From: Stylophora pistillata
Lineage: Eukaryota
Assembly: GCF_002571385.2 (NCBI RefSeq)
Contig: NW_019217813.1
Span: 326,130-390,129, forward strand
DNA length: 64,000 nt
Reading direction: 5' to 3'
The position numbers and the translations under genes were made by a program. This document shows positions 28,353 to 64,000 of this stretch, one piece after another (position 1 is the stretch's first letter; every line of letters begins with the position of its first letter). A model generated the notes under the pieces. That model saw only the letters and a list, made by a program, of their open reading frames with translations. It was not told the origin of the DNA and searched no databases.

Positions 28353-31300
28353 TCACAGTGTAGTCTCCTCCTCTCCGTCAAGCAACACTCCGCCAGCAGG
28401 ATCTCGAACCAACGGTCTTCGCGTAACTCTTGGTGTATCTTGCAGGCTTTCATCCATGTCCGGTTCAAAGTCGTACTCGTCCAACATCCGCCTCGCGGAA
28501 TCTGCATGAGGGTGGTGACCCTCCTCTCCAGCAACGTACTTATGCGATCTTTCACATCCAGCTTCATGAAGGTAAATCTGCTCCACTTCGGACTTTCTGC
28601 GCTTTCTTCTTCGACACATCACGATAATTATGATAAGCAAAAATAAAAGGAAGAGTAGTGAAGATACAGTAATAACAATTATCTCTGTTGGAGTGAGTTT
28701 GGTTTGTTTTTCTTCGCCTGGACAGCGCAGGAAAGCGTCGTAGGTTCCGTGTAGCAGGCACTCTTTTATTCCAAGGACCTTTTGGCAGTAAAAACCGAAG
28801 AGACTTACAGAAAGTTTGTGGTGTGCAAGACTGCCTGAATCGGCAATGTCCGTAAGGCAAGACTCGTAGTAAAACAGAGCTTGTGATACCAGTGTCGGGC
28901 TGCAATGTTCCTGTAGCTTTCCTTCATAGAATGACTCGTAACACTTCTTTAGGGCCTCCTCTTCCAGAGTTTTGTTAAGGAACGCAAGACTGTAGTTCGC
29001 TAAGGGAGTCAAGTGCACCCCTGACGGGGCCCATCCAGGGGAGTCTCCAGAATGAATAAACAGATGAATATTGGTCATATTAACGACTTGAGCCTCGAAT
29101 AGAGAGAGTGCTTCTTCAGTAGGAATCGGACTATAAAGGTGCCCCACCGTCGTTTGCCCCACTCCTTCGTCAAAAGGTATGCTTAACAACAGTCCTTCGC
29201 GGTAATCCTCGAACTTGACGCTCATGGACATCCTGATTTGTTCCATCGTCTTTGCATATTGCCACACCTTAAACTCGTCCAACGCACCAAACATGTCGTA
29301 TTCACTGTCTACCATATAGCCTCGCATGTAACGTCCTAGAACAAACAGACCATTGAAAGAGAATTGCTTCCCATTTTTTACCCCATATCTTGTTGATTGA
29401 CGATGCTGTCCGTTTGAATAAACGAACGCTTGCATTCGGCCATCGATCCTCCTCCATGTTACAGCTAAATGAGTCCAAACTCCTTCGTAAAGGTTAATAC
29501 CCGTTATAAATTTCTCCTTGTCCCATTTCACCTGTAGTCCGTCTTTGTAAACTATTGCAAAGTCCCTAATAGCGTTGGCAACAGAGAAAACTGCGTGACC
29601 CCCGGTGACAGGTTCAGTGGTGTTTCTCTGGTCCGTGGTACAGAGTGAAGCAACGCTAACGCCTGCATTCGTCAAACAGACCCATCTTTCAATAGTAAAT
29701 TCATCGAGAACTGGTAAACTTGTGTTGCTTGCATACATAACAGCAGTGTTACCAGATGAGAACTCCAACATGTAACCAGCTCCAGAATAACTACGCCAAG
29801 CATATTTTGTTGTCAAGAAATTGTCCTTTTCCATGATTCTGAACCGTGTAATCAGTTGTGTTTCAATCGTTGCTTGGGTAAGGCCTTGCTGATCTTTTGT
29901 GCTATTGTTAGAGGTATCAGGTACAAGGTTCTCCGATTTAAGGCTTTTGTTTCCTTGTTGTCTTATCCAAATACTCTCCTTCTCGCCACAGATGCCATCT
30001 GTTTGATCTTTCTGCTCTAAAACTTCAACTGCCGTTCCGATGGTTCCGTAATAGGATAGAATGTTAAACTGGATTTCCTCTTGGATGCGAACTTCCAGGA
30101 TGTTATCCGTTAGCCAACGGTATTGGATATCTGCATCCTCGACCCATTGATCAGACTTTGAAAGCTCCTTGGAGGTGTTGCTTGTTAAATCAAATAAACT
30201 ACTTGCTACTGTTTCTAAACCGTTGTAACGAACAGACAGCTCTCTTTTCGCGGTGCGCAGGGCAACCTCGCTGATTCTTCGACAGGACACTCTATTGTTG
30301 CATGGAACTATCAGCACCTGTGCAACTACAACCGATGAGTTGAAAAGGTGGTACGCCCCGGGAGCTTCGAAGTGAAAGTTTACTCCTGTAACGCTCGTAA
30401 AATGAGGATCACCAAAGTTGATTGCAATTCTGGGGATAGAGGAATTCTCCAGTATGGAGGAATCCTCTGCAATCGCACAGTCAGCTCCTGTCCAACCAGG
30501 TGTGCACTTGCTGCAAGGTATTGGCGGGATGGAATTGTTTTCAACGATTGGAGCGGTATATTCAGCCGATGTATTTCCTTTCCAGTGTGATTCACACTCG
30601 CAGGTACCATTAGTTACACTACAGACACCGTGTCCGTTGCAAGTTTCTCTCAACCCACCTGGACATAGATTTGCACAGTCCACTCCCCAATAGTTTTGTT
30701 CGCACTTGCAAGAGACGCCATCCGTTGAGTTTATATCTGGGATGGGATACCCGAATACGCATCGTGTATTACAACTTGAGCCAATCCAGTAGGGAAATCT
30801 TTGGTCGACAAAGTGATGACAAAGTTCCTTCGCTGGCCACTCGCTTAGATTGAGATCGTTCTGACAATGGTCTGCAAACGTAACCACGGGATAAACGGCC
30901 GAACGTAACTGAGACGACAGCGAAATGTCGTGCAGGCACACTTTGTAGTGGAATTGTGCTACCTGGATACCGAGATCTTCACACTTAGCATACAGCGGTC
31001 CACTGAGGATAAGGCTAAAACAGAAGGATTCTGCATCTCGCTGCAAGCTTAGGTTAACAAAAGCTGTTTCTTCCAGGTTCACGCGAGGAATATCAGCATC
31101 TGAAAACGTCCACTGCGGCTCATGAAACTTCGTCACAAATAGATCATTTTTTCCAAGTAAGTCAAGAATGATTCTTCCGTTAGCCTGGTTGAACTTCCAA
31201 AGGTGAAGCAGATCAGGGTAAATGCCAGTCTGTACATTCAGTCTCCAATTACTTTTCACGAGGTCTGAGTTCGTCCGTCGCTTCCAGATACGAAACTCGT

Positions 31301-34300: not shown

Positions 34301-37300
34301 ACTTGCCTCAGTCCTGGGTTCCATTATAATTAACAATACATTCACACTCTCCTGTGATGACATTACACAGTCCGTTGTTGTTACATGGGTTCGCAGCTCC
34401 GCCAGGGCAAGCATTTGTGCACTCCAGACCCCAGTAGCCGTGGTAGCATACGCATGTCTCAGAGGCCAGCTTCTTACCGTAGACACATTTTTTGTCACAT
34501 CGCTCTCCGAACCAAATGGGAAATTCTCTTCCAGGGAATTCATTACAAAGATGTTTCGCTGGCCAGACTGTTAAGTTGTTGAATGTTTGACAGTAATCGG
34601 CGTACGCTATAATAACTTCCATTGACATGTACAAGGACTCGAAGGTCGCGATTCTTTGGAGACACGACCTGAAGTAAAATGTTGACACGCCAGGTCCCAA
34701 GGATTTACAATTCGAATGTAATGTGCCCATTAATATTGTTCTGTTGCAAAATTGTTCCGCAGCTACTTGTAAACTTTAGTTGGTAAAGTTGAAATGTAGT
34801 GGTCTATCGTAGAAGGGCATTTGCAATACTGCATCAGAATATCTCCATTCTGGTTTTCTCCATGGCTTAAAAGGAAGGTCTAACTTCATACCAGTTACTT
34901 TATCGATCGCTGTAATTCCTTCTCCTTCGTTAAATTTCCATGCGTGCGCGAGGTCTTGGGCTTTTACGCTTACCGATCTGTTCCAAGTGTGCAGTATGAA
35001 CGCAGGATGGAAATACCGTGTCCATATGCGAACTTCATCTATGAATCCAGCAAAGAAATCAGTTGGTTGAGTTCCGGATCCGTCGAGAGATGGCATCCAA
35101 CCAGCCAAAGCAATTATTCCTCCTGGTGTAAAGATATCAACTCCCATGTTTAAGTCAAGGCGATGTAGCTGGCCTCCAGACGAAAAATAGTAAAAATGCA
35201 AGACTGTGGTGGATTTTCTGAACACCAGACTGACCTGGTTCCATTTGTTAAGCTCTGCAGCTATGTTTGTATGGTAAACATTGTCTCCATAGAAGATGGT
35301 GAACTTTCCACCTGTGTTCGTTACGAAGAATGTCTTTCTCAAGGTATAAGATATTATTACCCCGTAACGCACCGTTTTAAACATGATCTTAACAGATAGG
35401 TCTGTGAATGAGAATGCTTTGTAGATTACATCAGACACAACAGTAGTTTGGTCGAAGTAAAGCACATATCCTGCATTCGCTTCTCGATATTCTACGACTT
35501 CCCCATATTTGTACTCAAACAAACTATGGCATTCCTTCACCTTGAGCTTGGTGGTTATAAGAGTGTTAATGACATCTTGGGTCTTTGCTTTGGTATCAGA
35601 GGCATTCTTTTCACCAAGGGTGTCACCTTGACTAAACACATTGGGATGGTTTCGACTTAGGTTTAACATAAAGCCTTCTTCAGAACAATTTTTGGTCGGA
35701 TAATACGACATAAGCGATTCTAGTAGTCCTTGGTTACAAGCGCCTAGTAGGCCAATGGATGACTTGCAAACCAAACCCGATGCCTCAACACTTAGACTTA
35801 GGAAGCGCCCAATAACGCGTATTTTTAGGTACAAACCAGTGTATTTCACTTCCCACAGTTGAGCTGTGATTTTGCTGACAATCAAACCGTAGAGTTCATG
35901 AGTGATTGGATGCAAATCTATATCGATGACTTTTCCGTTTAACCATATGATCAGGCCTCTACCAGCACTGTATGGTCCATGCAAAACTACTCTGTTAGAT
36001 TCAATTTGCAGTGCAATAGAATTTATACATGATTCTTGTTGAGTGCAAGTTACCAGGCGAATTTGCACATTTACAGAGACGTGAATGGAGTAAATAAGAT
36101 AGTACTCCCCAGTCACTTGCAAGCTGTAACTAACCCCATTGAGTGATGTAAATTGCCCGCCAAGCAATACTGCACCAATGCCTATTACGACACTGCCGGA
36201 TGGCCACTGAGTGACTGCTATTGAGCAGTCTGTTCCAGCCCAGCCTCGAGTACAAGTTGAACAGTTTTCATTTCCTTGCCAATTAAGCTCACAAGAACAC
36301 TTGCCAGTGACGACATCGCAGACTCCATGACTGTTACACGCGTTACCTTTTCCTCCTGGGCAGATGCCAGAGCAGTTCGTTCCGTAAAATCCAGGATCAC
36401 ATACACAGACTTCGCTTTCGTTTGCAGCTTGACCAAAAATGCAAGGGATGGTACAGTTCCTTCCAATCCAGTTGGGAAAACGCTTTCCAGGAAATTTGTT
36501 GCACAAAGACTGAGCTGGCCAATGAGGCAAACCAAACAGTTTTTGGCAATAATCTGCGATTGTTATTACGACATCAATTGATTCAACTGTCAATCCTGTG
36601 TCCACTACTGCTTGAACACATGGGCGGAAGTAAAATTCTAGTGTGACATTGCCTAAGGCATCACAAGCTGAACGGATTGGTCCCTCATATATGAACTGGA
36701 AACAAGCCTTGATGGCGATTGTACGTAGAGTGGCATTATTTTCATTTGGGTTCACTGCGACAACAGAGGCTATTGGGGCATCAGAGAAAACCCATTCTGG
36801 CTTGCCTAATGGATACCTTGGGAAGAGTAGAGTAACACCAGTCACCAGGTCTTTAAGGATTGAATTCTTGCCCTCATTAAATTTCCACAAATTTGTAAGT
36901 TATGGAGCACCCGGTTGAATATTTGATCGCCAGCTTTGTTCAACCAATGCATAATCGAAGGGTCTTGCCCACACGTATACTTCATCTATTTGACCGAGGA
37001 AGAAACTGGTTGGCTGGATGCTAATAGATCCAGAGGCCGGTTGCCACATGCCTATAGCAAATGTTCCTACACTAATGAAAGGGTCGATAGAAAAACTAAA
37101 CTTTCGCACTTGCACAAGCCCAGATGAAAATGTGACGAACACAAAGAGTTGAAGCCTCTCACGGACAAATACTACTGTAATTTGATTCCACCTTTCTGCT
37201 TCAGTGGCAATGCCGGTGTCAAAGACGTCTAATCCAATAACAACCTTCACTGTTACATGGTTGCTGACGTAAAGCGTGACATTCGATGCAAAGGAGATCA

Positions 37301-52300: not shown

Positions 52301-55300
52301 CATAACGAAGTCCCCATAAAAACTTGTTTCATCGCTTTGCGTACCATAAGTTGAAAAAGGGAATACCAATTGAAAGAAATCATCCCACATTCTTCATTTT
52401 AGGAATTATTGAAAATCCTGCTTAGAGCTTTGCTGAGTGCAAAAGAGCATGATGCGTATTTATTTCGCAGTACAACAAGCAAACACATATGAAGTACTAA
52501 GAAATATTCTACCGTAATTCAGACTTTTTACCTCTATTTGCACAGTTTGGATTTCCAGGACAGTCTGGTATATGACATCCGTCACCAGTCCATCCATTCT
52601 GACATATACAAGTATGGAGAGCACTGTTACATTCCCCACGACCGGAACAATCTTCTCCCTCACCGGGACATCCAGGATTTTCGCAATATGTTCCACGCCA
52701 TCCAACGTCACACTGGCACTTGCTATCAACGATGGTTCCATGCTCTGAGCATTCGCTATCACATCCCACTCCAACCCAACCAGGCTCACACACACAATTG
52801 GCACTGTCCATTGGAATTTGTTGACCATGCACACAAGGGTCGTTACAAGCCGGTCCCATCCAGCCTTTGGAGCAGTTTTGGCACTTGGGTGGGTTTACAG
52901 AGGCGTTGCAAATTCCTCGTTCAAAGCAATTGGGGGTCCCTGGACAGTCGGAAATTTCACAGCCTTTACCAGCCCAACCTTCGTTGCACGTGCAAACATG
53001 TGTTACAGTGTTACATATTCCGTGGCCTGTACAGTCTGAGCCAATACCAGGACAGCCTGGATTATCACAGAGGTCTCCTCGCCAACCGACGTCACACACA
53101 CAACTTTTGTCAACAATCTTACCATGTTCTGAGCATTCACTATCACACCCAACACCTTTAAAAGAAACAACTGAAAATAAGTACACGAGCAACCGGGTAG
53201 CCGTAGAAGGCAAAATAATAGACTTACGTTAATGTTAAAAGAGAAATTCAAATATATATGCTGGATAAACATCCTGCGTGAAAGGTTGTCATTTCACTAC
53301 TTCTGCACCCGTAACACTACCTTTTCTTTTCCATAAATTAAAGACCATATAATTTCTAATCAGACGTAATACACACCAAGGCGTTAAAATCAGAACATGT
53401 TATATAAAGTTAAAAACAGTTTTGTTTTAGGTTTTTCCACCCGATATTTTCATCTTTACCTGTGTATCCAGGCCAACAAATACACTGTCCACTGTCCATT
53501 GGAGTCTGCTCTCCAAACGTACACGGGTCAGCACATGCAGGTCCCATCCAGCCTCGACTGCAGTTCTGACATTGTGGAGGAGTAACAGACGCATTACAGT
53601 AACCTCGGTTATTGCAGTTTGGCGCCCCTGGACAATCGGGAATATTGCATCCCAAACCAGCCCATCCAGGGTAACATGTGCACTCGTGTGTAGCGCTGTT
53701 ACAGTCACCATTACCTGTGCAATCCTTACCATCACCCGGACATCCAGGAATTTGGCAAACGTCACCTCGCCAGCCTTGGAGAGGATCACAGTTGCAAATT
53801 TCATTATCGGAGCAAGTCCCGAGGCCCATACATAGAGAATCACAGCCCTTGCCAGCCCAGCAGGGATCGCACTTACAAAATCCACTGTCCATTGGCTCTT
53901 GTACACCATTGACACAAGGATCATTACAGGCAGGGCCCATCCACCCTACGCTGCAGTTGACACACATTACAGTACCATTAATCGCTGAGCAGGTACCTCG
54001 ATTATAACAATCCGGTTCACCAGGGCAGTCAAGCTCGCTGCAGTCAAATCCACGCCAGCCTGGGTTACAAAAACATGTCAGAAGAGCGCTGTTACAAATG
54101 CCGTTTCCTGAGCAGTCGTTAGGACATTTTGGAACCTCGCAGTAATCACCCTTCCATTCACTGCCGCAGTAACAAGTGCCGTTAGTACATGTGCCATGTC
54201 CCGAGCAGAGCGAATGACAGTGAGTTCCGATATAGCAGGGATCACATTTGCACTTGCCACCAATGCAAGTCCCATTACCTGAGCATTCATACCTACAGTC
54301 ATCTCCAGTATAGCACGGATCACATACACACTTCCCTGTCACGCTACAACGACCATTCCCGTGACAGTCACGTTTAGCGTCACACTTATGTTCGCATCGA
54401 TAACCCACATAACCAGGATCACAGTCACAACCTCCGGAAGCCGAGCAACGTCCGTGTCCTAAACATGTGATTGACGGGTCACACTGGTACAGACAACTTA
54501 CGCCGTAAGAACCAGCATCACACGTGCAATTACCTTCCTGGGCGGAAAATGTTCCATGACCGCTACATTCATTACCAGCTGCACTTATCTGTCCGCTTCC
54601 TCCGTTACCAGCACTTCCGCCACCCGCAGCCCCACCAGATACATCCCTTTTTCGAATTATATCGCGCCTGATGTAATCGGGAGAAAAGTGACGAAGGTGT
54701 CCGCCACCACCCCCACCGCCATTGTATTTTCTGTAGCTAGAGCAAGGATTACCACTGCAGCATGCGGAGCGACTGCTTCCTGCACCCCCTTTCAGAGTAA
54801 GATGCCCATGCCCTTCAAAATGTCTTCCAGCGACCCAAAGAGTTCCACCGCTCGCCCCACCTCCACCACCGTCTCCATTAGCGCCATCGGACTTGATCGA
54901 GCCATCGAGCTCCAAAAGCTTTTCTACACTTACAAAGACGACGCCTCCCCCACTAGCTGAAGTACCTCCACCTCCACTACCTGCTTGTATGGCTTGCGAT
55001 ACACTTTCATACTTGTTACCACCTGGAAATAGGAAAAATTAAAAAACAAATCGAGGAATAGTTTGGAATGCTACACTACACTAACGCCTCCTAAAGATAT
55101 ATTTATAATTTTATCGCTCGCATCCTTTCATTGAACCTTGCACAACAAATCGGATTGAAAAGAGAATGCACTCTCTCTTCTTTCTGACAAATTTCAGCAC
55201 ATATTTGGTGTGTCGAAAATAACGATTAATTAACATGATCTACAATAACAAAGAACACGAACCCAAGATGTCCTGCTTTGAAAATAAGTTTCCCTACCTC

Positions 55301-58300
55301 TCCGGATACAGAGAGGTCAACATCATTCTGTTCTGTTTGAACCCTGACTTCTGAATGTCTGTGACAACTGCTGAGCCTTTTACTGCGGCCGATTATATGA
55401 GGTCAAGTATTTATACCACTTCACAATTCACAAATCTTTATATCAAGAATTCCATAGGTTCACCTTGAGCGATAGCATCGTGGTTACCCTTATAAATTTA
55501 TTTCCATCTCCATTTCTATAGAAAAGCGACTTTATGAGTTCACTAACCTCCCGCTGTACAAGATGAACATCCACTGAAGTACCCAGTCCCCCCACGGCCG
55601 CCATGACCAGCTCCCGCTACACCTGAACAAGCTGTAGAACTTCCAGGCCCCTTTTGGGATGACCAACCAGAGCCTGAGGCATCCGTAACCGCGTCTAACT
55701 CAAGCCTGAAATATTCTGTTAGCAATTTGGCAGCGTCCGCCTTCAGTGATCCCGTGTAGTCTAGAGCTATTTCTCCCGTGTGAAGACGTACTGCCAGAGA
55801 TGAGATTGTTTGTACTGAGCTTTGCACTTGAAATGTTCCTCCCAAATCCACCTGCAGCTTTTTAAACCAGTAATGGCCAATGTAATCGGTTGTATAGTTA
55901 CTGTGACAATCTAAGCAAGCTGAGAAGCCTTTTTCTGTAACCAGGGTGCCGACGTTTGACGACAACCTTAGTTTCTCTATGCCATGGATCTCACCGTTGA
56001 CAGTTAATGCTGGAGCCCTGGTACCAAGAAGAGTGGTCTGAATTGGAAATACAATCTGACCTCCTGAATGGGCTTCGTAGTTCACAGGAGCCTCCGTGCG
56101 AACGCTGTGGCACTCAACGTATATTCTGGTATTCTGTAATGCCTGTAGTATGCCTGTCTTGTCACCAGTAGCTTTCCTTATGACTATTTTGACAAGCTTT
56201 CCCGAAACCTTCAAACGAAAATATCAAGTTTGAGAATTATCAACGTGGCTCCTAATTTTGTCAACAACAGGTAACTTGGATTCTGGGAACTGAAAAACGA
56301 AAAAAAATAGTCGGGTAGTGGTGGTTGGGTTCAATTTTCAGTTTTGTGATATAGCATGACTAGAAAAAGAGTAAATCAGGAATGCTTCTCGCATTATACC
56401 AAACACTAAATTAATATTTATTTGTCGTAAGACGCCGAAGATTTTTATTCATCTGAACCTTACCTCCTTAAAAGCGAGCGCTCCTTTCCTTACTAAGTGG
56501 ATTCTCTCAAACTCATAGAGAACTGTGTTTGCCTCAGCTAGTGTAACTGGTAACAAATTGTCCCTGTTATTGTTGTCAACCTGTATCATGCGATACGGTT
56601 CCTCGCCGACATCCACATCAATGTAAACTGTTCCTGGACTGCCATGATATTTGGTGCCACTATTGCCTCCTAGCGCAGTCAAGGTCCCTCTAAAGATGAA
56701 GTGCTCTGTGAGATACACAGCAATACGGCCCCCTGAACCAGCTCCTTCGTGACTGGGTCCTGCAAATTGATTGAAAATGCAAGATGGCTCTCAAAATTCT
56801 TGACTTAAAATTGATTCACGACCATCCTTTTAATTAAACAATGCAATCGAAAGTCACTCCTTTTTATAACTTATGACTGAAAACTGTTCTTTACAAAAAA
56901 ATACTGCCTATCTAAACAACTTTCACGAGCAATGAGCTAATAATAAGATCTAACAAGTTCTCGATATGCACGGAGCCAGATTTACACATGGCCAAACCTA
57001 TGATGTTTCACTTTTCTGTATTAAATACTTTTGCATTGATTAAGTTTAGTAAGCCACCTATTTTCATGCGGGAATAACCTGAAATCGCTTTAAAAGATAA
57101 GTTAAAAAAGCACGGCATAGTTTCGAGTAAGACTTTTATAAGGAAATCCACACAAAAAATAGATTTTACGAAATTGGTAACAATTGATACAAACCTCCAT
57201 GACACTCAACAGTACCTTAGCCTTTAAGGAATAAACTCTTCACAATGATAGCGCCACCGCTTCCACCTCCGGAGGACCTTGACGACGAACCAACACCATT
57301 GGCTCGAATAGTTCCCTCAACTATCACATATCCTCCGGTGTTAATATAAAACCGTCCACCACCGGCACCGTAGCCACCACCACTTCCTGGTTCATCGGGC
57401 CAATAAACAGAGCCGTGTTGTGTTCCTAAGGCAGCTCGCCCACCGGGTGAAGCGTGGCTGCCACCTGTACTTCCGGACCCAGCACCAGGACCACTCGCAG
57501 CTGTATAACCAGCACCTGAAGAGTCTATCAGACCTCCACTTTCGACAGTGACGAAGTCAGCATTAATGGTCACGTCGTTTGTAGAGAGGATGAGTTGACC
57601 ACCTGAAAGAAGAGTGCGAATACTATTCAGAATGAATTACACTTAAAGTTGTGTACACACAATTTGTAGTTCAGAATCCCTTGAGTTTTAATCGGGTAAG
57701 AAGTAGATAAATCTCCTATTTCTGTCAATATTTAAGCACTAGAGGAATGAAGTAATATTACCAGGGTCTTAAAGTCTCAGTGGCAGCTCGCTTCTTGCGA
57801 TTCATAATACTATAGCTAGGCTAGTTGTTCCCTGTTATCTATCTGAGTTCCACCAGTGAGTATAACAATAGAGTATGGACGATATTTCGGACGTTCTCCA
57901 GTATGTTAGACACCAGCATGAATCTTGGCTCACCTTTTTTAACAGTAGTGTCGGCGATATTAAGTACAACTCGGATTGGAGACATCTTGACTTTAGCTAA
58001 CCCAGCATTACTTATGATTAACTGTGGAACAATGATTAGTCCTGGAGTAAATGGGTCAAACGGATTATCAGCAAGCCACTGTGATTCCTCGGGTAACTGC
58101 GCACTGTGAGCTGTTCCTCCAAATTCTACTAGGCCATTTCTCTCAACTACAAGCCTCTCTACTCCAGTAATCCGCCCTCTTATGGTTGAGCTCTCCCCGC
58201 GAAGGATAACCTCCGTAGGAAAGACAATTTCAGCATAGTCTTCGACGTGAAAGCCACAAGGAGCGTCCATGTAAGTGTGAGTTGACTGCACCACAAATAC

Positions 58301-61300
58301 AAATAAGCGCTGTCGAGACACCAGCTTTATAATTCCAGTTTTATCTCCAGTTACTTCGTGTGCTATGACCGTCACATTCCGTGCCGTCTCTGGATGATAG
58401 AAGATTACTGTAGAATGACCCTCCACTTGCATCTCATCAAACTCATAAAACACTGTTTGATTTTCCATGATAACCGTCGGCGTAGCGACGTTGTTATTTT
58501 CATTGTCAACTTTGACCTTGGAGTGCTCTGGTTTGAAGGTTGTTAAGTTCGTGTCCGGATTGTACTTGAGGTCGCGGTATTGTGGACCACGGCGACTCTC
58601 GTATTTGTAAACTGTACCAGCTGCGCCTGCGTTGTCGTTATAGCCAGAAACATTACCCCCAGCGGACCGGAATTTACCTGGAGGGTACCACCAAATGTTT
58701 GAATTATAACATTAACACATCTGTGATTCATGCCTAAACAGGCAGACAAAGTCTTAAATATTTAACTTTCAAATCGGCACTTTTAGTCCTCACGGTATCA
58801 TCGAACGCTTTCCATTCAAAAAATTAACCCTTTTTTCACGTTACCATCTTCCCAAAACCAATGCAGCTCCATTTTTTTAATGTAAAACACACGCAACCCA
58901 CAATTCCTCTATTCACTCTGAGGAAGGACTAACACTCGAAACGTTCGCTTTTAGAAATTTTTTCGGCGGCCTATTTACATTATCAACCATTTCATAACAC
59001 CAAATTATCTTAAAACTAATTCTACACTTGTCTACACCATTATCAACTATTTCATAACACCAAATTATCTTAAAACTAATTCAACAGATGTCTACACCTA
59101 CCACCAAAATTATTCCGGAAGTCGACATGAATGCCGATTCTTCCACCAGCTCCTCCTCCTGCATTTGACTGCGCGTCCCCGCCGTTGACATTAATTTCTC
59201 CATGTCCAGTCATATTCGTGGTCTCTATCAGAACACTACCACCACTACCTCCGCCCCCGCTATTGCTACCACTCTGTCCTTTGGATGACAGACGGCCGTC
59301 CAGATGAATACGTTTTCCAACTTGCCACCAGAGAGATCCACCGCCTAAATATGTTTGAAAACATCAATATATATTGAGATATCTAAAGTCATAAGCATAA
59401 GCGGGAAACGATTGCATTTCAAAATCACGATAACACTACATTGGGGAGGTAGGAGTGCTTTAGACGATCTTTTTCACGTCAGGCTTGGTTTCTGGGCTCT
59501 GCCACAAGCATGTAAAGAAGTAAAGTGCTCTGTGCGTGAGTATCATGCACAGAATGATGCACAAATGTCCACCCATTGCCAGTTACCCGGTTCTTTGAAC
59601 TAGGAACTACAATCAGAGAGTTATACGTATACCCTTGTTCTTGGTTTGATCGTAACCTCGCCAGCGACAGCTGCAGTGGAAACTAAAATGAAGAAAACAA
59701 CTTATTCCGAGTTCTTTGAACTTGGAACTACGCCCACAGGACGTTAGTCTCCAAACACAAACTCCAAATCACTTGTTAAGATAAACTTATAACATTTTAC
59801 CTGCTCCTCCTCCACTCCACTTCCCATGTCCTCCTCCACTACCATAAGAGAGCGGCTTGTACACAGATCCGTAAGCGCCACCCCCGTTGTTATAACTATG
59901 AGATCGTCCTCCTTGTCCACCAAAACCACCACCAGATCCTGAATTTGACGAATCACTCAACCCTGCACCGGGACCCGTCGCTGCCTTGTAACCAGCACCA
60001 TCAAGTACAACTACACCTTTAGTTTCCACATCAGCAAAGGCGGAATAAAATATGCCATGGTTCACTTTCACTGTTCCCTTATGAAGAACTTCAAACACAG
60101 ACGACGTGACTGACACAACGACATCTTCCACACGCACCAGGTCCAGTAAACCGCCTTGTTTTATTATGATGTGGGCAAAAGAGCTGTTACCAGGTTGGGT
60201 GATATCAATGTAAGTGCGGTTCTCCGTTAGGGCCGTTTGTGCCGATGATGCTATCTTAAGGGTGGCTCCGTCTTCAAGGAAAAGAAAGTGCACACCTGTC
60301 ATCAAACCGTACAGCTCAGACCTAACTCCATGAACATGAAACTCTGCTGGCAGGACGATCTCAGCACCCTTGTCGATACGATAACTACATGGAGCTTCGG
60401 TTCTGTTTGTTTCAGATTCGACTAGTTCCACATAGATGGTTTGATTAACCCTCAAATGAAACTTTCCAGTCTTGTCCCCAATGAATCTATGTGCTATCAC
60501 TGTAACGTCCGTCTCGTTTGGATGATAAACGATAAGGCGTGAATACCCTGTGAGTTCAACCTCATCAAACTCATAATTTGTAGTTCCTTCCTCCATAAGG
60601 ACGGTGGCTTCAGGCACATCATGTCCCTCATTATCTACATGAAGATATGTATGATCTACAGCCAGGAAAGTCGTGTTAGTTTCTTTGCTGTATTTAAGTA
60701 TTCGGTATTCCAATGGACGAAGATTCTCCTGCTTGTAAACTGTTCCTGCAGGGGCACCATACTGACTTTGTGTTCCAAATCCACCTCTGTCAGTAAATTT
60801 TCCGCCAAATGTGTAACTAAAACGACAGTGTATTCCAACGCGACCTCCAGATCCTCCTCCCCCTTGGTTTACAGCATCTCCACCGGTTACAGCAATCTCG
60901 CCATGGCCAGTCATGTTTGTTGTTTTTATGAGAATGCTTCCACCACTACCACCACCAGCGTGGCCGCCATTACCTGTACCGCCTCTGGCTGAAATAAATC
61001 CGTTAAGTTCTAATCTTTTTCCAACTTCCCAAAGAAGTTGACCGCCTCCAATCCCTCCTGTTCCTCCCCCGTTTCCACCTCCGCTACCTAGTACCAAGGG
61101 GCGATAAACTGAACCATAGGATTGTCCCCCTGATCGAGCCCCTCTCCCTCCATGACCTGCTCCAAGGCCAATGGAACTTAGAGTACTTCCGGCACCGTGT
61201 CCCTTTTCAGCCGTATTTCCTCCCTCGTCCAAATTAAAATTACCTTGGCTGTCCAACCAAGCGAATGTTGAAAACACCTCTCCGTGGTTCATGCTAACTT

Positions 61301-64000
61301 TTCCTTGATACTTTATCTTAAGTTCGTCAACATTTATTCTCAATAATCCAGTGTTCTTTCGGAACTCGACGTCGCCTCCCTTCTTGACGATAACAATTGC
61401 GAAAGAAATATTTCCTGGCTTTGATATTGCAATGTAGTCGCCATTCTCTATCAATGCTGTCTGTGAGGTTGAATAGAAATCAGCTTCAGCACCAAAGGAC
61501 ACAAGTAAATCTCGAACGCCAATGATCATCCCTTCGAAAACTGAACGCGTGCCATGCATTGAAAACTCCGACGGTAAAATAATCTGTCCTCCCACATCGA
61601 TCCTATAACTGCAAGGCGCTTCAGTTTTGTTTGTTTTTGACTCAACATACTCCACAAAGATCCTTTGATCACGACGGATGTGGAACTGTCCACTCTTGTC
61701 ACCTATGAACTTGTGTACAACAGCTGTTACTGTGACGTTTCCAGGATGATAGACCAGAAGGCGTGAGTAACCTGTTAGCTCCATTTCATCGAATTCATAG
61801 TAGGTGGTATTTTCTTCCATCAAGAGAGTTGCGCCGGGAACATCATAACCATCATTGTCAATATGTACGTAAGTGTGATCAACTGCTAACATGGTAGTGT
61901 TCGTTTCTTTCATGTATTTAAGGTGTCGATATTGAAGAGGTCTGAAATTCTCTTCTTTATAGATTGTTCCGGCTGGTCCACCATACTTTCCTTCCTGGCC
62001 TCCATTATCAGTGAACTTTCCTCCATACTTGTATCGCCACCGGCAGTGAATTCCAACTCTCCCACCAGATCCTGCACTTCCCGAACCGGTTCCTGAGCCA
62101 CCAGGAACAGCAATTTCGCCGTGGCCAGTCATGTTTGTAGTAGTTATCAAAATGCTACCGCCGCTTCCTCCACCAGTATCGATTCCTTCTCCATTAGTTC
62201 CCCTTGAGGACAAAAGTCCATTGATCTGAAGTCTTTGACCTACGATCCAGAACAAAGATCCCCCACCAGAGCCACCTATCCCTCGGCCATTACCTCCACC
62301 ACTGCCATACATCCGTGGGGTGTAGACAGAATCGTATGGGGATCCACCTTCACCATGTTCTGTTTTTCCGCCCTCCCCGCCGTGACCAGCCCCAGAGCCA
62401 AAATTATTTTTGGTTGTTCCATGTCCAAAACCTTGTTCAGGGCCAAATCCTGTACCATCCAAAGACAGAATACCTTCGCTCTCTATCCAAGCAAATGCAG
62501 AGTAAATATAGCCATGGTTCATAGTCATCAGTCCTTCGTATTTAATCTTGAACTCCGAGCAACGCAAACTGAGAGTGTAGTTGAGAATGCGACTGAAAGT
62601 TATTCTTGAATTCCTTTCAACAGTTACAGTAGCAAACGAAAAGTTTCCATTTTCGTCTATCTCTACATAGCGGCGATTCTCCACCCTTGCTGTTTGAGCA
62701 GTGGACGAGAACTCAACAAACCCTCCACTTGCAATTATCAAATGTTCAACCCCTGTGATTCGTCCTTCGATAATGCTTCTAGTGCCATAGATGTTAACAA
62801 TAGCTGGGAAAACTACTTCAGCTCCTTGGTCAATCTTGTAACTACAGGGTGCTGTAGTCTCATTAGTCTCCGACTCCACTACTTCAACATATATGGTTTG
62901 GTTGACTCTGACGTGAAATCTTCCTGTACCATCTCCAAGAAAACGGTGTACAATAACGGTGACATTAGGACTCCCTGGTGGATGCCTGACTTGCAAATTA
63001 GCATGCCTTGTGAGGAACAACTCGTCTAATTCGTAGAATAAGTGCTCACTCTCCATCATTATTGAAGAGACCTCGGTTTTGCGATCTTCATTATCAACTT
63101 CCATGTACCTGTGAGTTGCTGTAATATAAGTTCTATTTGTGCTCTTTTCGTACTTTAAGTCAGCATATTGTGGTCCACGTGCAGTTTCTTCAACGTACAC
63201 TGTGCCTGCTGCAGCGTAAGTTTTTCCGTCTCCTCCATACGCCTTAAATACTCCAGCATACTTATGACGAAAGCGTACATGCGCCGATATTCTACCACCT
63301 GAACCCCCGGACCCACTTGGACCAGAGCCATCTCCTCCCATAACATTAATTTCTCCATAGCCAGTAAAGTTCGTTGTCTCGATTAAGATACTTCCACCAC
63401 TACCACCGCCAGCGCTAGTTCCAGAACCATCGCCACCACGTAAAGTAACGAGTCCATCCAGTTCGATCTCCTGTCCAATTCGCCAATGCAGCATACCCCC
63501 ACCGAATCCACCTTTTCCCTGCCCATTACCTCCACCGCTACCCAGGTGAACTGCTTTGTATATAGAGCCATATGACTCCCCACCGAGCTGCCCTGCCTTA
63601 GAAACTCCACCTATACCGCCATGGCCTGCACCAGATCCAATCAAGTTCACTGTATTGCCTTTACCTGAGCCCATTTCAGCTGGATGTCCGGTGAAGTCTA
63701 AAACAAGTTTACCTTCACTTTCAACCCAAGCCCAAGAGGAGTCGATCTCTCCATGGTTGATGTTGACTAATCCATGATATTTCAGTCTGAAAATGATTGC
63801 AGTAAACACTAAGGTGTTGTTGATCCGCGAAAACTCCAACTTTGAGCCTTTCTGTACGTACACCTCTGCAAAGGTGATGTTGCCTGGTGTGGTTAGGAAT
63901 CTGAATTTTCTGTCTTCTTTAATACCGGTCTGGGTTGTTGAAGCAAACACAACATTGGCGCCTTCAGCAACGATAAGTCGATGAACACCTATAACCAGTC
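28353..64000 (-). CDS. Giant (>10,000 aa) type I membrane protein: Gly-rich repeats + tenascin-like EGF array + 9x(EGF-VWD-LamG/pentraxin-C8-like) + TM + PDZ-binding tail; 5'-partial; five in-frame stops (possible pseudogene/null allele)
   Basis: Minus-strand GT-AG exons with compatible phases: 64000-59801, 59344-59102, 58677-57934, 57602-57195, 56759-56464, 56208-55548, 55022-53460, 53155-52532, 51230-50901, 50447-49281, 48924-46626, 46249-46120, 45878-42890, 42760-28353. These sum to 30,062 nt. The long ORFs in the track join into one frame. Internal stops are at 57217, 39801, 36900, 34776 and 34308. Confidence 0.88.
28617..28682 (-). other. Transmembrane helix of the giant protein
   Basis: IIVITVSSLLFLLFLLIIIIVM followed by CRRRKRRK (positive-inside), then an ~85-aa cytoplasmic tail ending EETTL*. 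Confidence 0.9.
28700..45878 (-). repeat. Nine tandem ~640-aa modules: EGF/laminin-EGF, VWD, LamG/pentraxin-like, C8-like
   Basis: VWD starts ((G/H)x(F/Y)xTFDG-like) near 45600, 43750, 41780, 39940, 38080, 36170, 34220, 32330 and 30420. Each is followed by a LamG-like block (YALxF..WNHVxLV..LxLGxW..FxGxIDEVRIW..LWKFNEG) and a Cys block (FYYxAC..ADYC..WPAxxLC). Confidence 0.85.
46970..54570 (-). repeat. Coding tenascin/teneurin-like EGF repeat array of the giant gene
   Basis: Dozens of CSGxGxC...CxCxxGWxGxxC units across exons 55022-53460 to 48924-46626. Confidence 0.9.
58767..59010 (+). mobile_element. Penelope-like retroelement 3' fragment (GIY-YIG C-terminus + hammerhead-bearing pLTR), antisense in an intron of the giant gene
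   Basis: 58767 onward translates FQIGTFSPHGIIERFPF, resembling the 'LGTLxPxGxN' end of Penelope GIY-YIG endonucleases. It is followed by ctctgaggaaggactaacactcgaaacgtt and homology to 5455-5705. Confidence 0.7.
58979..59098. repeat. 60-bp tandem duplication next to splice donor
   Basis: attatcaac(c/t)atttcataacaccaaattatcttaaaactaattc...tgtctacacc occurs twice. Confidence 0.8.

What the first reader, a model, noticed from the sequence alone, without database searches (positions are those of the whole stretch)
28353..64000. A >10,000-aa single-pass surface protein with an unfamiliar modular architecture
Seen: 14 exons splice in frame into about 10,020 codons, still open at the window edge. 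The order is Gly-rich ~410-aa repeats, a tenascin-like EGF rod, a small insert domain, nine EGF-VWD-LamG/pentraxin-C8-like modules, a TM helix and a tail ending ETTL. Known: VWD-C8 tandems typify mucins, FCGBP, tectorin and zonadhesin, but I do not recognise any characterised protein in which each VWD is separated from its C8-like block by a LamG/pentraxin domain and capped by these Gly-rich repeats. Inference: a giant adhesin, glycocalyx or pattern-recognition receptor (mucus layer, skeleton attachment, gamete or symbiont recognition) that automated annotation would fragment into several 'uncharacterised/tenascin-like' models.
Basis: partly seen in the sequence, partly recalled or inferred. 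Interest (0 to 1): 0.85.

Follow-up and report, generated by a model that had tools for sequence, protein, structure and literature searches.

The report
Giant coral beta-helix/EGF/VWDE-module surface protein
This is the 3' two-thirds of a real, expressed coral gene for one of the largest animal proteins (about 17,000-20,000 residues): a membrane-anchored surface fibre that nobody has studied. The reference sequence carries five premature stop codons, and most other samples do not have the four that could be checked.

Summary
The domain order is also right: ~410-aa Gly-rich repeats, about 48 teneurin-type EGFs, a 161-aa insert, nine EGF-VWD-pentraxin/LamG-helical modules, one TM helix and a tail ending ETTL.

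Three corrections:
1. Four were checked against other DNA and RNA samples. All four read as sense codons in two samples, and each stop reads as sense in at least three of the four.
2. The "C8-like" block is Pfam's Vwde helical domain, so the modules are VWDE-type, not mucin D assemblies.
3. The gene runs about 60 kb past the window edge, with about 30 Gly-rich units in all. It probably equals RefSeq's 17,517-aa "LOW QUALITY PROTEIN" LOC111321626, so in this species it was not fragmented. Its Saccoglossus orthologue is fragmented.

New here:
- Each Gly-rich unit folds as a right-handed beta-helix like bacterial adhesin stalks.
- A single GDPH motif about 575 residues before the TM, and an E-[ST]-x-[VLI] C-terminus, are conserved in all orthologues that reach the membrane.
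- Relatives occur in a sea anemone, a mussel, a hemichordate and a choanoflagellate, all uncharacterised.

Best reading: a giant apical surface or matrix fibre. It is a new variant of a known kind, of moderate to high interest.

The parts
59801..64000 (-). Exon 1 of the window model. It is open at the window edge; the exon really starts near 64469 in extended coordinates. It holds about 3.5 Gly-rich beta-helix units of 410 aa.
   Evidence: Open frame and translation. HMM matches 1-410 at 64430-63210, 63209-61974 and 61973-60750. AF2 model of 63209-61974: pLDDT 88.5, all-beta solenoid. VIA Z 19.1 to the EtpA TPS domain.
54568..59344 (-). Exons 2-6 and the first part of exon 7 (59344-59102, 58677-57934, 57602-57195, 56759-56464, 56208-55548, 55022-54568). 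They hold the last two, more diverged, Gly-rich beta-helix units.
   Evidence: Splice model and HMM hits. No Pfam or NCBIfam family matches.
57217..57219 (-). In-frame TAA (codon 1857 of the window model) inside exon 4.
   Evidence: It aligns with Tyr/His of the 'KGYG/TGHG' turn in sister repeats, and homologue alignments run through it. It was not covered by the reads call.
53460..55022 (-). Exon 7. One exon holds both the end of the last Gly-rich unit and the first 12 or so EGF domains. This is the physical link between the two parts.
   Evidence: Translation. Pfam EGF_TEN/EGF_Teneurin E 1e-37 to 1e-39. HMM hit 55023-54730.
46979..54567 (-). Teneurin/tenascin-type EGF rod (exons 7-11): 1,725 aa, 290 Cys, about 48 EGFs.
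   Evidence: Pfam EGF_TEN, EGF_Teneurin and EGF_2 in every piece. Counts. Exon junctions restore EGF consensus, e.g. CICDPG|WTGVGC.
46120..46978 (-). 161-aa insert domain of unknown fold. It comprises the end of exon 11 (46978-46626) plus the 130-nt exon 12 (46249-46120).
   Evidence: Splice model. No Pfam hit at E<=10. No PDB sequence hit.
30789..45878 (-). Modules 1-8, each EGF cluster / VWD / pentraxin-LamG jelly roll / Vwde-type four-helix block. Coordinates: M1 45878-44052; M2 44051-42066, interrupted by intron 42889-42761; M3 42065-40236; M4 40235-38376; M5 38375-36471; M6 36470-34515; M7 34514-32634; M8 32633-30789.
   Evidence: Pfam VWD, Laminin_G_3, Laminin_G_2 and EGF_Teneurin. Module alignment A2. 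AF2 of M8 plus Foldseek hits to MUC2/VWF D domains and to pentraxins. PDB profile hits to neuronal pentraxin 1 at E 5e-10 and MUC5AC at 1.6e-7. Nine profile matches, only at this locus.
39801..39803 (-). In-frame TGA in the VWD of module 4.
   Evidence: Other samples read AGA (Arg) in X1, X4 and X18. Orthologues have Arg. No other letter is listed for X14.
36900..36902 (-). In-frame TAA at the end of the jelly-roll domain of module 5.
   Evidence: X1, X14 and X18 read TTA (Leu). No other letter is listed for X4.
34776..34778 (-). In-frame TAA at the start of the helical block of module 6.
   Evidence: X1, X14 and X18 read GAA (Glu) and X4 reads AAA (Lys). Sister modules have Glu.
34308..34310 (-). 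In-frame TGA at a conserved EGF cysteine of module 7.
   Evidence: All four runs read TGT (Cys). Six of six orthologues and Pocillopora P0024 have Cys.
28689..30788 (-). Module 9, next to the membrane: EGFs, a diverged VWD that starts with GDPH, an enlarged pentraxin-like domain and a helical block.
   Evidence: Pfam Laminin_G_3 1.2e-24 and Pentaxin 8e-8. VWD is only E 0.02, covering 4-141 of 156 profile positions. Some homologues carry RGM_C, PF06534.
30402..30413 (-). GDPH motif (residues 9334-9337 of the window model), the only one in the protein. It is a candidate autoproteolytic GD|PH site.
   Evidence: Every homologue that reaches the TM has one GDPH 554-583 residues before it; here the distance is 577.
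28614..28682 (-). Single transmembrane helix (IIVITVSSLLFLLFLLIIIIVMC), followed by an RRRKRRK stop-transfer stretch.
   Evidence: Kyte-Doolittle scan finds one segment in 10,019 residues. Weak Pfam TM/juxtamembrane matches.
28353..28613 (-). 86-aa cytoplasmic tail ending EEETTL (ETTL at 28367-28356), then stop TGA at 28355-28353. The ending is a class I PDZ-ligand type.
   Evidence: Orthologues end ESAL, ESAV, ESCV, ESHV, ETDL or ETGV. The weak Cadherin_C_2 match (E 7e-5) is below the family cut-off.

Best explanation
The region is the 3' part (10,019 of roughly 17,000-20,000 codons) of one single-copy gene of the coral Stylophora pistillata. It encodes a giant type I membrane glycoprotein. 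Read from the far end to the membrane, it has:
- about 30 tandem 410-residue glycine-rich units, each a right-handed parallel beta-helix. I infer that they stack into a very long, Cys-poor solenoid fibre;
- a rod of about 48 teneurin-type EGFs;
- a small domain of unknown fold;
- nine VWDE-type modules (EGF cluster, VWD, pentraxin/LamG jelly roll, four-helix 'Vwde' block);
- one TM helix and an 86-residue tail.

Most likely mechanism (inferred):
- The protein is displayed on an epithelial surface as an adhesive or protective fibre of the apical matrix or glycocalyx.
- The jelly-roll and VWD domains provide lectin-like binding and lateral contacts.
- The membrane-proximal VWD cleaves itself at the conserved GD|PH, as in MUC4, SUSD2, RGM and MUC2. 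This would leave the huge ectodomain held non-covalently and releasable under force or at low pH.
- The conserved E-[ST]-x-[VLI] C-terminus ties the stub to a PDZ scaffold.

The five premature stops in the window belong to the reference sequence: base errors, or a rare null haplotype. They are not the normal state of the gene.
For: Shown:
- The exon model has consensus splice sites and a continuous frame.
- One exon contains both Gly-rich and EGF sequence.
- The repeat phase is kept across introns up to extended position ~123,000, on the minus strand only.
- The units fold as a beta-helix: pLDDT 88.5; Z 19.1 to EtpA and 17.6 to HMW1.
- VWD, pentraxin/LamG and a helical bundle are confirmed by Pfam, AF2, Foldseek and a PDB profile search.
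- PF26129 'Vwde' is recorded on the homologues.
- GDPH spacing and the PDZ-type C-terminus are conserved in 10 or more homologues down to about 40% identity.
- Modules and Gly-rich units occur only at this locus in the genome.
- The 5.7-kb stretch is held by 20 runs from 9 studies, including polyA RNA-seq. Contigs are colinear with no indels. One polyA run shows a 3'-high depth profile, 122 against about 5.
- Samples X1 (DNA) and X18 (RNA) read sense at all four tested stops. The alleles in the runs match the orthologue residues.
- About 40 orthologous ORFs keep the length of the 2,563-aa upstream exon.
- The Saccoglossus orthologue is colinear over extended 122,443-98,569.
Against: - No read or contig was laid across any intron, because the reads tool's single call went on the intron-free stretch. 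A single transcript is therefore inferred from exon content, frames and orthologues, not seen.
- The N-terminal exon and signal peptide were not located. There are assembly gaps at extended 101,191-102,950 and 130,776-132,665.
- The displayed rows show no other letter for X4 at 36901 or for X14 at 39803, and 58 rows were hidden. Those two stop alleles may therefore exist in another sample and be real variants.
- The fifth stop (57219-57217) was not tested.
- GDPH cleavage, PDZ binding, stacking of the units into one fibre, the tissue and the ligand are all untested.
- The VWD of module 9 is below Pfam's threshold (E 0.02).
Confidence: 0.6

Rival explanations
1. The copy in the window is a dead or dying gene. 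On this reading the five stops are real, and the reference haplotype is a null allele or young pseudogene.
For: - The window sequence holds five nonsense codons.
- Of 19 sites where at least 3 of 4 runs differ from the window, 17 are nonsynonymous, and the window allele is usually the non-conserved one.
- X4 and X14 each show no alternative letter at one stop site in the displayed table.
Against: - There are no indels or frameshifts in 30 kb of coding sequence, or in any of four samples over 5.7 kb.
- Two samples are open at all four tested sites.
- The differences are almost all transversions. At four sites the samples read C or T while the window reads A or G. That looks technical rather than evolutionary.
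- In X1 and X4, both branches of a heterozygous bubble differ from the window (table 8).
- An earlier follow-up on another window of this genome found the same kind of private stop (s1-775569).
Confidence: 0.25
2. There are two or more neighbouring genes. An upstream gene would encode only beta-helix repeats, and a downstream gene would encode the EGF/VWDE/TM receptor seen in the window.
For: - The 5' end was not found.
- There are introns of up to 2 kb and an assembly gap within the repeat region.
- In Saccoglossus the locus is annotated as separate models.
Against: - Exon 7 joins Gly-rich and EGF sequence in one exon.
- The repeat phase continues across every intron examined, and no stop-plus-TM end or signal-peptide exon appears in between.
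- The Saccoglossus split is an annotation artefact, since one coral exon bridges the two models.
- A 17,517-aa, one-TM RefSeq model exists in this species.
- At most, this rival could apply to the far-upstream units, not to the window.
Confidence: 0.1
3. It is mainly a skeleton-building or skeleton-anchoring protein, acting as a desmocyte or calicoblast attachment fibre, or as a skeletal organic matrix component.
For: If XP_022780303.1 is this gene, two peptides of it were found in cleaned S. pistillata skeleton (PMC7115838 supplement). Giant TM proteins with shed ectodomains are typical of coral skeletal proteomes (PMC3748352; PMC4890752).
Against: - Only 2 peptides were found, at 0.07% coverage and in one fraction.
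- Identity with this gene is not proven.
- Relatives of the beta-helix part occur in a sea anemone, a hemichordate, a freshwater mussel and a choanoflagellate. None of them builds a coral-type skeleton.
Confidence: 0.15
4. It is a gel-forming, mucin-like polymer built from VWD-C8-TIL D assemblies. This is the family the reader compared it with.
For: Nine VWD domains are present. Foldseek's top hits for the module are MUC2, MUC5AC, VWF and FCGBP D assemblies.
Against: - No piece has a C8 or TIL match.
- The block after the jelly roll is a four-helix Vwde domain.
- The window model shows no Pro/Thr/Ser-rich mucin region and no CTCK domain by Pfam, and the protein is membrane-anchored.
Confidence: 0.05

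Closest known systems
[quoted passage not shown]
   Same: VWD plus teneurin-type EGF repeats. Homologues of this gene carry the Pfam family named after VWDE (PF26129 'Vwde'), which covers the helical block. VWDE is itself almost unstudied (PMC7390686).
   Different: VWDE is described as a protein with one VWD plus EGFs and is thought to be a secreted ECM glycoprotein (PMC7390686). This gene has nine modules, a TM helix, a PDZ-type tail, a GDPH site and about 12,000 residues of beta-helix. Whether VWDE also has the jelly-roll domain between VWD and Vwde was not tested here. No vertebrate VWDE appeared in the word-seeded searches.
MUC4 / SUSD2 / RGM (membrane-proximal VWD with GDPH autoproteolysis)
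   Same: A single GDPH at the start of the VWD nearest the membrane, followed by a TM helix, with a giant ectodomain further out. Some homologues match RGM_C. Coral mucin4-like skeletal proteins are known (PMC4890752).
   Different: There are no NIDO or AMOP domains, no mucin repeats and no GPI anchor. About 575 residues (pentraxin-like domain and helical block) lie between GDPH and the TM. Cleavage is untested.
Bacterial beta-helical adhesins (EtpA, HMW1 and FHA TPS domains; Ag43, pertactin, TibA and IcsA autotransporters; Fap2)
   Same: The predicted fold of each 410-aa unit. VIA gives Z 19.1 (8cpk_A), 17.6 (2odl_A) and 11-12 for the autotransporters. Foldseek's top hit is EtpA. Bacterial proteins share the Gly-rich last 170 residues at about 40% identity.
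   Different: This is a eukaryotic, spliced gene whose units are fused to EGF and VWD domains and a TM anchor. There is no TPS or autotransporter secretion signal. The full 410-aa unit was traced only in eukaryote records (named kin: Saccoglossus, Salpingoeca, Potamilus, Actinostola), while the bacterial matches examined cover only part of it.
Gel-forming mucins, VWF, FCGBP, zonadhesin, alpha-tectorin (VWD-C8-TIL D assemblies)
   Same: Tandem VWD domains. The module profile hits the MUC5AC D3 region at E 1.6e-7, and Foldseek matches MUC2 and VWF D assemblies at about 1e-10.
   Different: There is no C8 and no TIL. Each VWD is followed by a pentraxin-like jelly roll and a Vwde helical bundle.
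Crumbs, usherin and ADGRV1-type giant EGF/LamG surface proteins with PDZ-binding tails (comparison from general knowledge)
   Same: A very large EGF/LamG-type ectodomain, a single TM helix (Crumbs, usherin) and a short tail ending in a class I PDZ ligand.
   Different: No sequence relationship was found. Those proteins have no VWD, Vwde or beta-helix parts. This is an analogy of layout only.
Pentraxins (neuronal pentraxin 1/2, SAP, CRP, PTX3)
   Same: The jelly-roll domain of the modules. The profile hits NP1 at E 5e-10, structural TM-scores (normalised by the target chain) are 0.6-0.7, and Pfam Pentaxin matches module 9 at 8e-8.
   Different: Here it is a domain embedded in a repeated module, not a free oligomeric lectin. 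Calcium and ligand-site residues were not examined.

Membership tests
VWD-C8-TIL D-assembly proteins (mucins, VWF, FCGBP, zonadhesin, tectorin) | VWD domain | tested here: met
   Pfam VWD at E 1.8e-18 to 6e-5 in modules 1-8. Module 9 reaches only E 0.02.
VWD-C8-TIL D-assembly proteins (mucins, VWF, FCGBP, zonadhesin, tectorin) | C8 and TIL domains after each VWD | tested here: not met
   No piece has a C8 or TIL match at E<=0.01. The position is taken by a jelly roll plus a four-helix bundle.
VWDE family | Pfam PF26129 'Vwde' domain | tested here: inconclusive
   The precomputed hits list PF26129 on nearly all homologues, including the 70-73% identical ones, and one search gives its name. The local Pfam copy lacks the model, so the window's own sequence could not be scored.
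VWDE family | VWD plus tandem teneurin-type EGF domains | tested here: met
VWDE family | Orthology to vertebrate VWDE (reciprocal best match or tree) | not tested
GDPH-autocleaving VWD proteins (MUC4, SUSD2, RGM, MUC2/5AC) | GDPH motif at the first strand of a VWD-type domain | tested here: met
   FGDPHFTS at 30413-30402. It is the only such motif in the protein, and it is conserved with fixed spacing to the TM in all homologues that reach the membrane.
GDPH-autocleaving VWD proteins (MUC4, SUSD2, RGM, MUC2/5AC) | Actual cleavage between Asp and Pro | not testable with these tools
   Needs protein chemistry.
Right-handed parallel beta-helix adhesin-like repeats | Beta-solenoid fold | tested here: met
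   AF2 pLDDT 88.5 and pTM 0.85. VIA Z 19.1 and 17.6 to TPS domains, and the other top rows are almost all beta-helix or beta-solenoid proteins.
ALK/LTK glycine-rich domain (Pfam Gly_rich) | Sequence match to the family, or an ALK-like fold | tested here: not met
   No Pfam hit at E<=10 on the Gly-rich part. No ALK or LTK chain appears among the Foldseek or VIA matches.
[quoted passage not shown] | Neurexin/Caspr-like layout of laminin G plus EGF, about 1,100 aa | tested here: not met
   XP_022804012.1 is 1,145 aa with a best primate hit to contactin-associated protein-like 2. The Acropora members align with neurexin. No second locus in the genome resembles this module.
Class I PDZ-ligand membrane proteins | C-terminal [ST]-x-hydrophobic motif | tested here: met
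   The protein ends ETTL. Orthologues end ESAL, ESAV, ESCV, ESHV, ETDL or ETGV. Binding is untested.

The most novel reading that the evidence does not exclude
The protein would define an undescribed family of giant surface fibres that is older than animals. About 12,000 residues form one continuous right-handed beta-helix made of about 30 units of 410 aa, the eukaryotic counterpart of bacterial two-partner-secretion and autotransporter adhesin stalks. This fibre is mounted on an EGF rod and a stack of VWDE-type modules, is releasable at a conserved GDPH site, and is tied to the cortex through a PDZ ligand. Kin occur in choanoflagellates, cnidarians, molluscs and hemichordates.
Probability: 0.4. 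Interest if true: 0.75.

Novelty: new variant of a known kind. Interest (0 to 1): 0.58.

Why it matters
At roughly 17,500-20,000 residues this would be among the largest proteins known in any animal, and nothing is known about what it does.

- It shows that the beta-helix stalk, the hallmark of bacterial surface adhesins, is also used on a very large scale by animals and their unicellular relatives. No Pfam or NCBIfam family yet covers the repeat.
- It gives the barely studied VWDE module a much older and richer context: nine copies, a GDPH site, a membrane anchor and a PDZ tail.
- Possible traces of it in coral skeleton make it a candidate for tissue-to-skeleton or apical-matrix attachment.
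- Practically, the reference genome of this model coral carries stop codons that most other colonies lack. Gene models and 'pseudogene' calls from that assembly need checking against reads.

Tried and rejected
- Stops as hidden short introns: rejected. Each stop aligns to a residue inside a domain in sister modules.
- Variant genetic code or selenocysteine: rejected. Both TAA and TGA occur, the gene ends on TGA, and other samples read ordinary sense codons.
[quoted passage not shown] They are Caspr/neurexin-like and about 1,145 aa.
- Mucin-type D assembly: rejected, with no C8 or TIL.
- Protein Atlas: only 'hypothetical protein' clusters for the Gly-rich unit, and generic Laminin_G_3 clusters at scores of 0.82 or less for the module.
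- PDB sequence searches with the Gly-rich unit and with the insert domain: nothing.
- Scoring PF26129 on the genome: the model is not in the local library.
- Locating the 5' exon and signal peptide: not achieved. One weak candidate was found at extended 127,018, and there is an assembly gap further upstream.
- Proving that XP_022780303.1 is this gene: not possible. Same-species records are withheld from the protein searches, and 17,517 aa lies outside the length range the search allows.
- Locus names of the named relatives occur in no searchable paper.
- It was used only inside local scripts, for coordinates, composition, motif and hydrophobicity scans. All searches used single exons or stop-free pieces by reference.
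- No contig that looked human was met.
Full report
**Where and what.** The window is G000:C30:326130-390129 of a 398-Mb genome. Earlier notes of this scan name the genome as the coral Stylophora pistillata. The closest named relative found is a Pocillopora meandrina protein at 87% identity. The feature lies on the minus strand. Its stop codon is at 28355-28353, and the reading frame is still open at position 64000.

**Checking the observation.**
- A splice-site search between successive open frames was refined by eye. I used the repeat and EGF consensus on either side of each junction.
- The result is 14 exons and 13 GT..AG introns of 129-1,301 nt, mostly phase 1. One exon is only 130 nt (46249-46120).
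- Pfam confirms the order. No family matches the first 2,335 residues. EGF_TEN/EGF_Teneurin covers the next 1,725. Then come VWD, Laminin_G_3/Laminin_G_2/Pentaxin and EGF_Teneurin, repeated.
- There are exactly nine modules by the CPGG landmark and by a profile of the module.
- There is one hydrophobic helix and an 86-residue tail ending EEETTL.
- The exon at 55022-53460 carries the end of the last Gly-rich unit and the first EGFs in one piece. The first two parts are therefore physically one gene.

- The model contains TAA 57219-57217, TGA 39803-39801, TAA 36902-36900, TAA 34778-34776 and TGA 34310-34308.
- They are not introns. In the alignment of sister modules they fall on ordinary domain positions, and the last falls on an invariant EGF cysteine.
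- The stretch 34200-39900 covers four of them. It is held by 20 public runs from 9 studies, including polyA RNA-seq.
- I laid the contigs of one DNA run (X1), one run of unknown type (X4) and two polyA RNA runs (X14, X18) on it. No indels and no joints were seen.
- Site 34308 reads TGT (Cys) in all four runs.
- Site 34778 reads GAA (Glu) in three runs and AAA (Lys) in one.
- Site 36901 reads TTA (Leu) in three runs.
- Site 39803 reads AGA (Arg) in three runs.
- X1 and X18 are open at all four sites. The run alleles equal the orthologue residues where the column is conserved.
- Caveat: the displayed rows show no alternative letter for X4 at 36901 or for X14 at 39803, and 58 rows were hidden. 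Those two stop alleles may occur in another sample.
It aligns with the Tyr/His of a conserved turn, and homologue alignments run straight through it.

**Is the reference haplotype broken or wrong?**
- Differences between the window and the runs are dominated by transversions: 32-36 per run against 4-18 transitions.
- At four sites the runs read C or T while the window reads A or G.
- Of 19 sites where at least three runs disagree with the window, 17 are nonsynonymous, with no third-position excess.
- Both branches of a heterozygous bubble in X1 and X4 differ from the window (table 8).
- With zero frameshifts in 30 kb, this looks more like base errors in the reference than like decay. A rare null haplotype is not excluded.
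- An earlier follow-up on another window of this genome reached the same view about a private TGA (s1-775569).
- Either way the species has an intact allele. One polyA run shows depth 122 over the 3' 5 kb against about 5 further 5', as expected for a very long polyadenylated mRNA.

**The gene is much longer than the window.**
- I fetched 70 kb upstream.
- An HMM of the 410-residue unit matches only the minus strand. The matches form a regular series from 54730 up to extended position ~123,350, about 30 units, with the repeat phase kept across introns.
- One upstream exon alone is 2,563 codons.
- The part beyond the window adds between 6,758 aa (HMM-matched) and 10,226 aa (open-frame upper bound). 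The total is therefore about 16,800-20,200 aa.
- A skeletal-proteome paper lists RefSeq XP_022780303.1 as 17,517 aa with one predicted TM and Notch (EGF) as best primate hit. [quoted passage not shown] Two peptides were found in one skeletal fraction (PMC7115838 supplement).
- Size, topology and the low-quality flag (which NCBI uses when a genome has frame problems) all fit this gene. I could not verify identity by sequence.
- The 5' exon and signal peptide were not found. The Saccoglossus relative starts with a clear signal peptide followed at once by Gly-rich sequence.

**What the parts are: the Gly-rich unit.**
- It has no Pfam, NCBIfam or PDB sequence match.
- It has 2,712 representative relatives, 233 of them at E<1e-30.
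- With an alignment of paralogous units and short homologues, AlphaFold gives a confident all-beta solenoid (pLDDT 88.5, pTM 0.85).
- Its best structural matches are the EtpA and HMW1 two-partner-secretion domains (Z 19.1 and 17.6). These are followed by autotransporter passengers, tailspikes and pectate-lyase-type helices.

**What the parts are: the module.**
- AlphaFold on module 8 (pLDDT 75.8) shows small EGFs, a VWD, a jelly roll and a four-helix bundle.
- Foldseek and a PDB profile search match MUC2, MUC5AC and VWF D domains, and pentraxins (NP1 at E 5e-10; structural TM-scores 0.6-0.7 normalised by the target chain).
- The helical block is the family that the precomputed Pfam hits call PF26129 'Vwde'.
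- The unit is therefore VWDE-like, not a C8-containing D assembly, and no C8 or TIL match exists.

**Conserved functional motifs.**
- The protein has one GDPH, at the start of the membrane-proximal VWD, 577 residues before the TM.
- Every homologue that reaches its TM has exactly one GDPH 554-583 residues before it. All but one of these end in E-[ST]-x-[VLI] (ESAL, ESAV, ESCV, ESHV, ETDL, ETGV); that one, P0009, ends ...FGRDR.
- From established knowledge, GDPH in VWD-type domains is the autocatalytic Asp-Pro cleavage site of MUC4, SUSD2, RGM and MUC2/MUC5AC. [ST]-x-hydrophobic-COOH is the class I PDZ ligand.
- Both readings are inferences here. They are strong on conservation but untested biochemically.

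**Distribution.**
- Modules and Gly-rich units occur only at this locus in the coral genome.
- The 2,563-aa exon has about 40 orthologous open frames of nearly the same length at 36-89% identity.
- More distant named kin are all hypothetical or uncharacterised: Actinostola sp. (sea anemone), Potamilus streckersoni (mussel, with an F5/8C domain), Saccoglossus kowalevskii and Salpingoeca rosetta (choanoflagellate).
- Many bacterial proteins share only the Gly-rich last 170 residues.
- The Saccoglossus protein XP_077861759.1 (4,555 aa) is colinear with extended 122,443-98,569.
- It is followed 808 nt later by a 5,938-aa model on the same strand. The hemichordate gene is therefore fragmented by annotation.
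- A 4,695-aa single ORF from a JGI contig combines Gly-rich units, Laminin_G_3 and EGF_TEN.

**Comparison with the known.**
- No characterised protein with this layout was found.
- The nearest named family is VWDE, itself almost unstudied (PMC7390686; PMC9117669).
- The membrane-proximal design resembles MUC4, SUSD2 and RGM. The stalk resembles bacterial adhesins in fold only.
- The coral 'EGF and laminin G' skeletal proteins are a different, neurexin/Caspr-like family.

**Verdict.**
- The stops belong to the reference sequence. The 'C8-like' block is a Vwde domain.
- It is probably already a single, low-quality, uncharacterised RefSeq model.
- I rate it a new variant of a known kind (giant mosaic surface/ECM proteins with VWDE-type modules), with interest 0.58. 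The beta-helix stalk and its pre-metazoan spread are the most novel parts.

Noticed in passing
window 34200-39900: Differences between the window and four independent runs are overwhelmingly transversions: 32-36 per run against 4-18 transitions. At 34778, 34796, 35342 and 35396 the runs read C or T while the window reads A or G. This is not a natural-looking spectrum. It may point to systematic base errors at polymorphic sites in this reference assembly.
   Followed up: partly
window 19027-19425 and 21320-21718: Two identical 132-aa open frames, with an identical opposite-strand one, lie 2.3 kb apart on either side of the N run at 20840-21143. This is probably a duplicated segment or an assembly duplication around a gap. 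No family was assigned.
   Followed up: no
window 1-28000: The 28 kb downstream of the gene is AT-rich (GC 24-39%). It has five N runs and no open frame above about 140 aa free of N. No second gene was evident.
   Followed up: partly
L011 (Saccoglossus kowalevskii GL018007.1:101518-170790): The hemichordate orthologue is annotated as two adjacent same-strand models (4,555 aa with an F5/8 type C domain, then 5,938 aa). One coral exon bridges them, so the true gene there exceeds 10,400 aa.
   Followed up: partly
window 46120-46978: The 161-aa domain between the EGF rod and module 1 (...VFAWFGYHNKNPHNVYVSVGADNFF...) has no Pfam or PDB sequence match.
   Followed up: partly
ENA assembly ERZ25878582, one 1.6-Mb contig (P0012, P0041): In an unidentified distant relative, a 3,163-aa Gly-rich ORF and a 2,761-aa VWD/LamG/Vwde ORF lie on the same contig. 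The latter is followed 4.6 kb further on, on the same strand, by a 1,165-aa LamG/Vwde ORF. This hints that the full architecture is conserved there, but the distance between the two parts is unknown.
   Followed up: partly
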